Shown here in pieces: positions 1-64,000 of a stretch of 64,000 bases of DNA. The DNA is taken from positions 744,001-808,000 of the forward strand of contig JBBPEB010000015.1 of the NCBI GenBank assembly GCA_039096225.1, in the 5' to 3' direction. Each line of letters starts with the position of its first letter. The stretch's first letter is position 1. Both the position numbers and the translations under genes were made by a program. This DNA is from Blastocystis sp. Blastoise (taxonomy: Eukaryota; Protista; Bigyra: Opalinata). The notes below the pieces were generated by a model. The model worked only from the letters and a program-made list of their open reading frames with translations, had not been told where the DNA came from and made no database searches.

Positions 1-553
1 GTGGAGGCTGCTATTCTTTTGGAAGCTAAATGGCAAGATCTTGCTGATGAAGTATATTTCAAAGTTATTATAATATATAATACTTTTTTTGGCTTTATAT
101 ATATATATGTATATATACAGATTTGGGTTGTTTCTATTCCTACAGAAGTAGCTATTGAACGTTTATCATCTCGAAATCATTTAAAATATCATCTCTATAT
201 AATATATACTATATATATAATATATAATATATAATATATAATATATAATATATAATATATAATATATAATATATAATATATAATATATAATATATATATA
301 ATATTCTATATCACCTTAATAATTCTATTCGTTCTCAAGCTATTGAAAGATTGAATTCTCAATGGAGTAATGAGCAAAGAGAACAATTTGCGACTAAAGT
401 ATATTTTCATATAAACTTCTTTTCATTTTTATATATTTTTATTTCATTGTTTTATTATAGGTATTTTATAACATTAATCAAAAAGAATTCGAAGAACAAG
501 TATTAACATGTTTTCATGAAGTACAAAATAAACTGATAAAATCTAATAATTAA
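1..553 (+). CDS. 3' part of dephospho-CoA kinase / bifunctional CoA synthase (5'-truncated by window)
   Basis: Exons 1-51, 121-185, 329-398 and 461-553 give VEAAILLEAKWQDLADEIWVVSIPTEVAIERLSSRNHLNRSQAIERLNSQWSNEQREQFATKVFYN...; this matches the DPCK C-terminal pattern (EAAxLLEAxW..xVWV..P.E.A..R...R..L....A..R..SQ). Intron 2 is non-canonical (AT-AT). Confidence 0.85.
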
Positions 554-28069: not shown

Positions 28070-30291
28070 ATGAGTAAAGAACGATTACTACAACGTGACA
28101 TTGAAATGAATCCTTTGCATAAAATCACTGATGATGTACTCTTGAAAGTTTTATCATACCTAGATATATCCTTTATTACTTGACTTTCTTCATTATTATT
28201 TGTGTTCATTAATTGTTTTTCTATTTTTTTCTTTAATCTCATAAGCGATATCATTAGATAATTATGGAAAAGCTATTGAATCAAAGTCTTATATCGCAGA
28301 AAACAATCATTTATGGAGAAATCTTATTTTACAAGATTTCTTTCCAAGTATCTTGTTTAATGATATCTAATAGATATATAATTCTATATCATAATTCTTA
28401 GGTATGAGAATGTTAAAGATTGTAGATGATCTTCAACAACCCATGAAAGAATCATATAAAAACTTGTATGTTTTCTAAATGACTATTTGTTTTTCTTATT
28501 CTTATTTCTATGATTTGTTTTAGAATCAGTCAGAGACGGTTATTCACTTATTATTTCCGTGAGGTCAATCGGAATGCAGAATATAATTGTATATAATTGA
28601 TACTATTATATAAATAAAGTATTTTATCAAGATGCCTTACAAAAGAAACGAGAAACATTTCGTGTTTTTCTGTTATTTATAAATACATTATTTCTATGGT
28701 TTTGTGTCCCGGCGCTCCTTTTTATTCAGAATATATGCTTTATTTTCTATTGTTTTGGAATTGTATGAATATAATAAATATATTGTACATTATAAGATTC
28801 TTTATCATTATATATAAAAGTATTATTATGTAATATGATATAGTATATAATATGATACTATTTTAAATAAATATTATATATATATATCATATTCTATAAT
28901 GTTATGTATAGATCCACTATTCTAGTTTATGTTTCATTCCATTATATTTAATGATATTACTTATACTTGGTGTTTTTATACTTAATACGGTTGTATTTGT
29001 CAATAGATATTGTAAAGATAATGAATCTATATTGTATATATATATATATATATATATTTATTATTTATATCCTATCTATATATTATATTGTTGAATAATA
29101 TATATATTATTATTATAGAGTTGATATTCACTATATATATATATTTATATATATAGATTTGGTCAATGGGACCATATAGGGTATACAATTGTGCGATTAG
29201 TATATGCAGATATATACCGATATCATTCTTCATCATTCATTCATATGTTTATATGTCTTCTCTCTATTATCTCAGTTGTAGTTCTTCTTACTCTTAAATT
29301 TGATAATTGTATATATATATATTGTATATCAATATTTATTTTATACTTTTGTAATTAAATATATATATAATTATAATTCTATATTTTAGCTACATCAGTC
29401 CCGTGGTTATCTATATTTATTATTATATGGGTAGTCCCTGTCTATTTACTTCTTTCACTCCCTGTCAAACAATGGGATGAAGGGTATATATATATTTATA
29501 TTAATTTAAATATATTCTAATTCTTATCATATTTACAAAACATATATATCTTTTTTTTATTATTAGATTTATTCTCCCTTAATTCTTATTGTATAATCAT
29601 TCATGAATTATTTGTTTATATATTATAATTACTTATATATATAGTACACGACTTATATATCGATTACTTATCTATGGTTTTGGAGGATCTCTATATATAC
29701 TCTCTATTCTCCTCTATATATCATTAGATATATACTCACTGCCTGTATCCATTATCTTCATTCCTATTTTTATTCTTGACTGTATATATATTGATATATA
29801 CATTTCTTTTGTTAATTTTTATATTTTCTACTTTTCTTTATATTCTTGTTCTTATATATATATATATATATATATATAGTGGCTTTAACAATATTTGTTG
29901 GATTTCCATCCATTGTAGAATTTATTAAACAAGTTATTTATAAGAATATCAAAGAAATCCAAGATACATTAGGTTTATTATGTTTTTACTTATTTGGTGT
30001 TCTCCCAGGAATTATTTCTCAAGTGTTATTATGCTATCAATCAATTCCATCTGGTTATTCATTTATTATTCTATTTGTTTTTTATGTATTTATATAAAAT
30101 ATTATATATAACATATTATATATAACATATTATATATAAAACACTATATATAACATATTATATATAAAATATTATATATATATAATATATCAATTATTGC
30201 TATTCTTTTTTAGGGTTATTTAGCCACTCAGTGTATACGTACTTCAATTCATTCTTATATTCTCCATCAATATTCCTTTTCTTTCTTATAA
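28070..30291 (+). CDS. F-box domain + multipass membrane (TMEM185/FAM11-like) protein
   Basis: F-box LHKITDDVLLKVLSYLD...IAENNHLWRNLILQDF. TM hairpin motifs LKFDNSTSVPWLSIFIIIW and ISLDIYSLPVSIIFIPIFILD. Intron 1 is U12-type AT-AA. Confidence 0.65.
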
Positions 30292-62049: not shown

Positions 62050-64000
62050 TTATATAGTATTTTGAGCCTTCATTATATTAATATAATCATAAGCATCTTT
62101 CTTTTGCTATATATAGAGAAAATTATAGTAATATATATAGAATAGTATTTATAAAATAAAAAATAAATTTTTGTATATATATAAAAAAATTTATATATAT
62201 ATATATATATAAAATACCTTTTCTACATCAAATCCTGAAGGTATTTCTTTTTCCATTAAGGAGACAACTTTGTCCACAACGGATTCAGCGACTTTCGTAT
62301 CAAGAAAAGAAAGTCTGCTACGACGAGCTATATAATCAATAGCAGTACAACAATATTCTTTTCTACAAGAGAAAACAACTTCTGCCTCTATATGTGGATA
62401 ATCTATATTCAAACGAGATCCTAAGTTCTCTGTCTTAGCTAAATCAGCTATCTATAGATATAGAAGATAAAGAAATGATATATATTCAATAAATAAATAT
62501 AAATAAATATAAATAAATAAATATAAATAAAATAAATAAAAATAATAAATAAAATAAACAATAAAATAAATAAATAAAATATAAATACTTGATAAGCTCT
62601 ATAGCCATAAGAATGTGCTAAATGATCTGCAATATCTCTAGGGAATGAATATGTATCTCTTAAAGTAGTAGATATTTCAGAAGGAATTAATTGTTGTTTC
62701 TTTTCATTAGCACCTGTAAGTAAGCTATCTTTTGTTGAACAACTTGTTTTCTTAGAAAGTAATTCACTAACTTTATTTATAGTTTCTTCAGCCATATTTC
62801 GAGTTGTTGTCCATTTTCCACCAACTATAGTAACTAAATTAGAAGGAGAAACATGAACTAAATGAGCACGAACTAATTCAGCTGTATTCTTAGCCTATAC
62901 ATATTATTCAAATAGTATTATATATAAATATATATAATATATTATATATATATATACTTTAGGATTTCTAACAAGAGGACGAATACCAGTAAAAGCAGAT
63001 TTAACATCATCTTTTGTAAGTTTTACATTTAATAAACTATATAATATAATAATAATATAATAATAATAATATAATAATAATAATATAATAATAATAATAT
63101 AATAATAATATAATAATAATATAATAATAATAATATAATAATAATAATATAATAATAATATCTATACCGATTAGCTTCATTAAGAATGAAATCAACATCA
63201 GTACCTTTAGTATACGGTCTCATAGTAATTTCACTTGGATTATCAGTTGTACCTACCATAACATTATTAATATATATGTTATTATAATAATAATTATATA
63301 GTATAGAATATATATCAATTTACAAATATATGAATAAATATAAATACTTATTAAGCCAAGGAAGCATAAAACACACTCTGCCATCAGCGGATTGGTTAAT
63401 TAGACCACGTCCCTCAGGACAATACTTACGATCTATTACAATATGAGTACCTATATAATATATATATATAATTATATAGTTTTATTTTATAAAATAAAAT
63501 AATAATAAAAAAAAATAAAAATAATAAAATATATAAAATAAATAAATACCAGAAGCAGGAATAATAAGAGATTCTTCTTTAGGATCATCCATTTTACGAA
63601 TAGTATCACCAAATACACCACAAGCATTTACTACAATATGACTCTTTATATCAAAGGAATTACCTGTAAGTACATCAGTTACATTTGCACCACATAATTT
63701 ATTCTCTGAATTCTTATTTAATTGATTTACTTAAAAAATATATATATAACAATATAATTTATATATATAAAATAAATCTATAATAATAATAATATATATA
63801 TAAATATACTTTAACATAATTCGATAATTCTGCTCCATTTTGTAAAGCAGTAAGAGCAATCATTAAGTCGTGACGAGCATCGTCATGTTGACCATCATAA
63901 TAACTATATAATAATAATAATTATAATAAAAAATTTCAAATAAATAATAAATAAATAAATAATAATAAAAAAACATACAGAATACCTCCTTTTAATTTAT
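62050..64000 (-). CDS. GPD2: Mitochondrial FAD-dependent glycerol-3-phosphate dehydrogenase, 3' part (5'-truncated by window)
   Basis: YYDGQHDDAR, NYVKV, VVNACGVFGDTIRKMDD, PASGTHIV, DGRVCFMLPW..VGTTD, FTGIRPLV, GGKWTTTRNMAEE, HLAHSYG, YPHIEAEV, IARRSRLSFLD. Two of the seven introns seen need TAA acceptors. Confidence 0.95.

What the first reader, a model, noticed from the sequence alone, without database searches (positions are those of the whole stretch)
63264..63347. GPD2 intron with no AG at all
Seen (minus strand): TGG CTT AAT AA|GTATTT...ATATTAATAA|T GTT ATG GTA GGT ACA ACT GAT. The 84-nt intron contains no AG, retention hits an in-frame TAA, and the next exonic AG frameshifts to a stop. 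The AA junction gives PW-LNNVMV-GTTD, the same 6-residue spacing as PW-QKMTIA-GTTD in mammalian GPD2 (recalled from memory). TTAATAA occurs just before both junctions.
Basis: partly seen in the sequence, partly recalled or inferred. Interest (0 to 1): 0.82.

Follow-up and report, generated by a model that had tools for sequence, protein, structure and literature searches.

The report
Likely polishing error, not AG-less intron
An intron of a tortoise-gut Blastocystis gene seems to end in AA instead of the near-universal AG, but the odd letter is most likely an error in the published genome, copied in from spliced RNA reads during sequence polishing, and the same error appears to break other gene models of this genome.

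Summary
In detail: the 84-nt GPD2 intron (63264-63347, minus strand) has no AG. Human-type Blastocystis orthologs carry a canonical GT-AG intron at the same position and phase, so the junction is right and the intron is old. The genome is Blastocystis sp. Rus-B/Blastoise. The AA is probably not real. In nine odd introns of five genes (GPD2, RPS5, alpha-SNAP, PSMB1, TPI), all 11 odd bases equal the base that a spliced read would lay on the intron end (about 3e-5 by chance for the seven ortholog-anchored bases, independence assumed). One RPS5 intron reads GC...GT. Putting GT/AG back gives consensus sites, and affected genes are codon-biased. This fits overwriting by RNA-seq overhangs during short-read polishing. 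The scan had noted such odd introns elsewhere in this genome; none of the notes I could see gave this explanation. Real relaxed splicing remains at about 8%.

The parts
63264..63347 (-). 84-nt phase-2 intron of GPD2; reads GT...AA in the assembly, U2-type donor GTATTT, no U12 donor or branch motif
   Evidence: orthologous 33-nt GT-AG intron in L010:4139-4171, L011, L013
63264..63264 (-). The base in question: A on the minus strand (T on plus) where G (C on plus) is expected; equals the last base of the upstream exon
63264..63270 (-). Intron-end copy of the 7-nt direct repeat TTAATAA
63348..63354 (-). Exon-end copy of TTAATAA
63348..63450 (-). Upstream GPD2 exon, ending in the DGR..F..PW motif; single copy in the genome
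63168..63263 (-). Downstream GPD2 exon with the GTTD motif
63320..63322 (-). In-frame TAA met if the intron is retained
63253..63405 (-). GT-AG 'intron' used by the public model KAK8803407.1 to get round the missing AG; removes 23 conserved residues
63731..63809 (-). Second GT...AA intron of the same gene (phase 0); upstream exon also ends in A
   Evidence: orthologous GT-AG intron L010:3791-3822
62050..64000 (-). 3' two thirds of the mitochondrial-type FAD glycerol-3-phosphate dehydrogenase gene (GPD2, WA158_001101); runs on past the window end; 13 introns in all (10 GT-AG, 1 AT-AC, 2 GT-AA as assembled)

Best explanation
The intron is an ordinary, ancient U2-type GT-AG intron; the A at 63264 is an assembly error. 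Inferred mechanism: spliced (RNA-seq/cDNA) short reads were aligned to the nanopore draft with a DNA aligner during polishing. Reads that cross the junction by a few bases hang into the intron and are aligned through one mismatch instead of being clipped; with few unspliced reads there, the polisher replaces the intron-end base by the exon base. The TTAATA match makes this acceptor unusually exposed. Shown: junction position, canonical ortholog, the copy rule in five genes. Inferred: the true G, and that RNA reads entered the polishing.
For: Orthologs have GT-AG at the same position and phase for both GPD2 introns and three RPS5 introns. All 11 odd bases in 9 introns equal the neighbouring exon base; product of exon-base frequencies 3.2e-5 for the 7 ortholog-anchored bases, 4.3e-8 for all 11, about 1.3e-3 for the four bases in genes not picked from earlier notes. 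Odd ends are of five kinds (AA, TG, GT acceptors; CT, GC donors), including a GC...GT intron in RPS5 that becomes GTATGT...AATAG on restoring. Background sites are strict: GTA 98%, TAG about 90%. Flanking exons of odd introns are more codon-biased (median 0.51 against 0.39, P=1.4e-4, introns not independent). In a toy +1/-4/clip-5 model 10 of 11 odd bases are the first reachable mismatch; 8 overhang lengths reach 63264, against 1-2 elsewhere. POLCA uses bwa mem and changes a base on more than one alternative read at twice the reference count (PMC7347232). [quoted passage not shown] Overhang into introns is a known RNA-seq variant-calling pitfall (PMC6853710).
Against: The methods name Illumina DNA for Polypolish and do not state RNA for the single POLCA round; the AG-to-GT acceptor in RPS5 needs two successive overwrites. 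Both genomic RPS5 copies share the odd ends although their introns differ. The predicted excess of exon copies at acceptor -3 and donor +3 was not significant (2/24 against 7/202, P=0.25; 1/30 against 0/164, P=0.15). Many reachable sites are unchanged, including one canonical intron with a 7-nt match (window 30086).
Confidence: 0.84

Rival explanations
1. Real biology: the tortoise Blastocystis spliceosome tolerates non-GT/AG ends, and intron ends have been overwritten in vivo by reverse-transcribed mRNA (short gene-conversion tracts), which would give the same copy rule and expression bias.
For: Copy rule and expression bias fit as well; both RPS5 copies agree; spliceosomes with relaxed ends exist in tunicates (PMC13326754, abstract only); Blastocystis ST1 has GA-AG and GC-AG introns (PMC5608401).
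Against: About 97% of introns keep very strict GTAT...TAG ends, so there is no general relaxation; a GC...GT intron in an essential ribosomal gene has no precedent known to me; cDNA conversion should also delete introns, yet the GPD2 introns compared are conserved with human-type Blastocystis; in Drosophila true GT-AA junctions number 3 of about 60,000 introns and all have an alternative splice nearby (PMC4528330), which this intron lacks.
Confidence: 0.08
2. Random nanopore consensus error (G read as A) left unpolished in an AT-rich intron.
For: R9 data and a xenic culture with MiSeq short reads; A/G confusion is common in nanopore data (own knowledge). Also predicts a true AG.
Against: Does not explain why C, T and G also appear exactly where the exon has them (CT, GC, TG, GT cases), nor the same change in both RPS5 copies.
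Confidence: 0.05
3. The DNA has AA and A-to-I editing of the pre-mRNA makes an AI (read as AG) acceptor.
For: Such editing of GT-AA sites is mentioned as possible (PMC7072748).
Against: Covers only the AA cases, not TG, GT, CT or GC; no ADAR-type mRNA editing is known to me in stramenopiles (not searched); does not predict an exon-terminal A in five of five AA cases.
Confidence: 0.01
4. Real loss-of-function splice mutations or a pseudogene in a cultured strain, or use of the alternative GT-AG of the public model.
For: The public model finds an in-frame GT-AG route.
Against: Single copy; frame otherwise intact; exon words held by RNA-type runs; the public route deletes the conserved DGR..F..PW segment; the same lesions hit both RPS5 copies.
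Confidence: 0.02

Closest known systems
RNA-seq overhang false variants at splice junctions (the reason for GATK Split'N'Trim; PMC6853710)
   Same: Exon bases laid on intron ends by reads that cross a junction; strongest in expressed genes and where exon end and intron end resemble each other.
   Different: Here the false variant would have been written into a public reference assembly; I found no paper describing that for polishing.
Canonical U2-type GT-AG introns of Blastocystis (PMC5608401)
   Same: Donor GTAT, conserved position and phase with human-type orthologs.
   Different: Last base A in the assembly; longer and far more AT-rich, as usual for tortoise isolates (PMC10690189).
Rare true GT-AA introns (Drosophila, PMC4528330)
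   Same: GT donor, one-base departure at the acceptor.
   Different: Those are 3 in about 60,000 and have a similar alternative splice; here no nearby usable AG exists and about 3% of introns look odd.
U12-type introns with relaxed acceptors (AT-AC, AT-AA)
   Same: The minor spliceosome exists in Blastocystis; GPD2 itself has a conserved AT-AC intron; U12 acceptors are flexible (own knowledge).
   Different: This intron has no RTATCCTT donor and no CCTTAA branch motif.
Non-canonical introns of Fritillaria-type tunicates (PMC13326754)
   Same: Spliceosomal removal of introns lacking GT/AG.
   Different: There 95% of introns escape the rule; here the rule is strict and the exceptions copy exon bases.

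Membership tests
GPD2 / FAD glycerol-3-phosphate dehydrogenase | DAO_C domain, GlpD motifs, orthology | tested here: met
   PF16901 at E 1.5e-18 on one exon; GlpD/GlpO structures weakly; orthologs at 48-83% identity per exon, with the upstream neighbour PP2C conserved
U2-type spliceosomal intron | GT donor matching the genome consensus | tested here: met
   GTATTT against consensus GTAT(A/T)T
U2-type spliceosomal intron | AG acceptor | tested here: inconclusive
   Not met in the assembly; met in orthologs; raw reads not seen
U2-type spliceosomal intron | Removal from the mRNA at these boundaries | not tested
U12-type intron | RTATCCTT donor and TCCTTAAY branch point | tested here: not met
   Neither motif in 63264-63347
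Recently inserted element or introner with target-site duplication | Intron absent at the orthologous site, flanked by a duplication | tested here: not met
   Intron present at the same site in human-type Blastocystis
Spliced-read overwrite artefact | Odd base equals the neighbouring exon base | tested here: met
   11 of 11 bases
Spliced-read overwrite artefact | Enrichment in highly expressed genes | tested here: met
   Codon-bias proxy only, P=1.4e-4, few genes
Spliced-read overwrite artefact | Excess exon copies at acceptor -3 and donor +3 | tested here: inconclusive
   P=0.25 and 0.15
Spliced-read overwrite artefact | Genomic reads show the canonical base | not tested
A-to-I-created 3' splice site | Genomic AA, AI in pre-mRNA, an editing enzyme | not tested
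   No reads; enzyme not searched

The most novel reading that the evidence does not exclude
The DNA truly has AA here, and a few percent of introns in tortoise Blastocystis have ends converted to the spliced-mRNA sequence (GT-AA, GT-TG, CT-AG, even GC-GT) and are still spliced exactly by a spliceosome that otherwise keeps strict GT-AG.
Probability: 0.08. Interest if true: 0.88.

Novelty: not a real feature. Interest (0 to 1): 0.22.

Why it matters
If the artefact reading holds, about 3% of intron ends (8 of roughly 300 in my unselected sample) in the public Rus-B/Blastoise assembly are wrong, chiefly in well-expressed genes, and its gene models are bent round them (GPD2 loses 23 and 6 residues; the RPS5 models lose an exon or their N-terminal third). 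That affects comparative work on this genome and gives one test (does the odd base copy the neighbouring exon?) for the many similar notes of this scan. If the bases are real, it would be a new splicing tolerance together with mRNA-templated conversion of intron ends.

Tried and rejected
The id of the public protein P0002, whose Ser-Gly codons touch 63551-63550, was used in two look-ups. Local scripts read the window file, masking those places for tblastn and not printing them. The joined GPD2 protein was never sent to a search tool: searches went exon by exon by reference, and joins were translated only inside scripts from coordinates. The word search found one distant fragment, so the large protein search was used once. 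A JGI metagenome scan found no close relative; contigs of this genome are withheld. Rejected: all in-frame alternative acceptors within 15 nt; sliding within the repeat (no shift gives GT-AG, GC-AG or AT-AC); U12 type; target-site duplication; pseudogene. Of 25 non-canonical HMM calls, several were model errors (canonical introns shorter than my 38-nt minimum, the U12 intron, low-complexity or terminal exons) and were dropped; window 161-309 and L044:7473-7646 are unanchored and left out of the 11-base count. No paper on RNA-read polishing errors at splice sites was found.

Full report
Source. The window is G000:C4:744001-808000 of a 33.3-Mb, 34-contig genome. Size and GC match Blastocystis sp. 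Rus-B from a Russian tortoise (PMC10690189 Table 1), and the public protein identical to a GPD2 exon is KAK8803407.1 of Blastocystis sp. Blastoise on a contig of 2,510,786 bases, the length of C4.

Observation. The 84-nt segment 63347..63264 on the minus strand starts GTATTT, ends TTAATAA and has no AG. Retention stops at 63322; the next AG (63253) frameshifts; among in-frame acceptors within 15 nt none is AG and only the proposed one gives six residues between PW and GTTD, as in 48 of 48 homologs. Both exons tested are single-copy, and two runs, one on record as polyA RNA, hold words of a GPD2 exon. A gene finder that I trained on about 200 kb of this genome, blind to repeats and homologs, picked the same junction. 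An AG-free intron body is itself ordinary here (120 of 293).

The intron is old and canonical elsewhere. Three contigs of a human-type Blastocystis carry a 33-nt GT-AG intron at the same codon position and phase. The same holds for a second GT...AA intron of this gene at 63731-63809 and for an AT-AC U12-type intron upstream of the window. So the junction is right, and the direct repeat is not the mark of a recent insertion. The public model avoids both AA acceptors and so drops 23 and 6 residues.

The pattern across genes. Confident introns have very strict ends: GTA in 98% of donors, TAG in about 90% of acceptors. The exceptions that can be anchored are: GPD2 (two AA acceptors), RPS5 (TG and AA acceptors and one intron odd at both ends), alpha-SNAP (AA acceptor, CT donor), PSMB1 (AA) and triosephosphate isomerase (GC donor). 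GPD2 and RPS5 are anchored by orthologous intron positions; TPI and the SNAP AA junction by contiguous residues in solved structures; PSMB1 by its downstream exon only; the SNAP CT donor by frame and remembered homology. In every case the odd base is the base that the spliced mRNA has at that alignment position. The last RPS5 intron was a real test: as GT...AT with a conserved protein length it would have broken the rule. Orthologs put the intron after the Gly codon, so it reads GC...GT; all three odd bases copy the adjoining exons, and restoring GT and AG yields GTATGT and AATAG. The four bases in genes met without a lead give about 1.3e-3. Exons flanking odd introns use more preferred codons (0.51 against 0.39), a proxy for expression.

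Mechanism (inferred). A spliced read that crosses a junction by a few bases is aligned through one mismatch by a DNA aligner rather than clipped (scoring recalled from bwa mem defaults); this pitfall is known from RNA-seq variant calling (PMC6853710). POLCA aligns with bwa mem and rewrites a base on more than one alternative read at twice the reference count (PMC7347232). With RNA reads, intron ends have almost no reference support. In a toy model, 10 of the 11 odd bases are the first reachable mismatch, and 63264 is reachable from 8 overhang lengths because of the TTAATA match, against 1-2 at the other sites; so long a match occurs in 1 of 293 canonical introns. [quoted passage not shown] That wording allows but does not state RNA polishing.

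What does not fit or is missing. The AG-to-GT case needs two rounds of overwriting. The -3/+3 side test was underpowered. Many reachable sites are unchanged. Both RPS5 copies agree, which fits shared multi-mapped reads but also shared ancestry. In vivo conversion by reverse-transcribed mRNA would leave the same signature and can only be excluded by genomic reads. An AT...AA intron at 28166-28244 does not follow the copy rule, but it has U12 signals and is a separate class. The joined protein was not searched; all searches went exon by exon.

Comparison. True GT-AA junctions exist but are very rare and sit beside alternative splices (PMC4528330). Blastocystis ST1 has GT-AG, GC-AG, GA-AG and U12 AT-AC introns and no reported non-AG class (PMC5608401). 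Tunicate non-canonical splicing is genome-wide, unlike the strict background here. Earlier notes of this scan list similar odd introns across this genome; they were leads, and only those on RPS5 and on this window were checked.

Verdict. Observation confirmed in the assembly; most likely an ordinary GT-AG intron with a mis-polished last base (about 0.84, or 0.89 for a true AG by any cause). Interest 0.22: low as biology, useful as a warning on a public genome and as a filter for related findings. Real relaxed splicing keeps about 0.08 and would deserve about 0.9.

Noticed in passing
L005:4740-4807 minus (just beyond the window end): U12-type AT-AC intron in GPD2 with textbook donor and branch point, conserved in human-type Blastocystis; missed by the public model, which inserts intron-derived residues.
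   Followed up: yes
L016:1403-1515 and L043:1428-1533: Last RPS5 intron reads GC...GT at the ortholog-conserved position, not GT...AT as noted earlier; two near-identical RPS5 genes lie on C1 and C21.
   Followed up: yes
window 28166-28244 plus: U12-type donor and branch point with an AA acceptor in an F-box gene; the upstream exon ends in T, so it does not fit the copy rule and may be a real AT-AA minor intron.
   Followed up: partly
window 52679-about 52811 plus: Probable AT-AC U12-type intron (donor ATATCCT, an in-frame AC acceptor).
   Followed up: partly
window about 190-310 plus: Intron with ATATCA at both junctions and no GT or AG at either end; boundary ambiguous, no homolog checked.
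   Followed up: partly
L044:2281-2357 and L026:2399-2533: GT-AG introns whose rare donor +3 (GTG) or acceptor (GACAG) copies the neighbouring exon; possible silent overwrites.
   Followed up: partly
G000:C9 (33.3 kb) and C12 (19.4 kb): Organellar-type rps7 on both contigs and two inverted small-subunit rRNA copies on C9: the mitochondrion-related organelle genome, partly present twice in the assembly.
   Followed up: no
L005:6300-9200 against L011:7100-9120: Gene order ubiquitin-like, PP2C, GPD2 is conserved between tortoise and human-type Blastocystis.
   Followed up: partly
P0183, P0217: Both public RPS5 models are damaged (one lacks the N-terminal third, one skips part of an exon), as expected from the odd intron ends.
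   Followed up: yes
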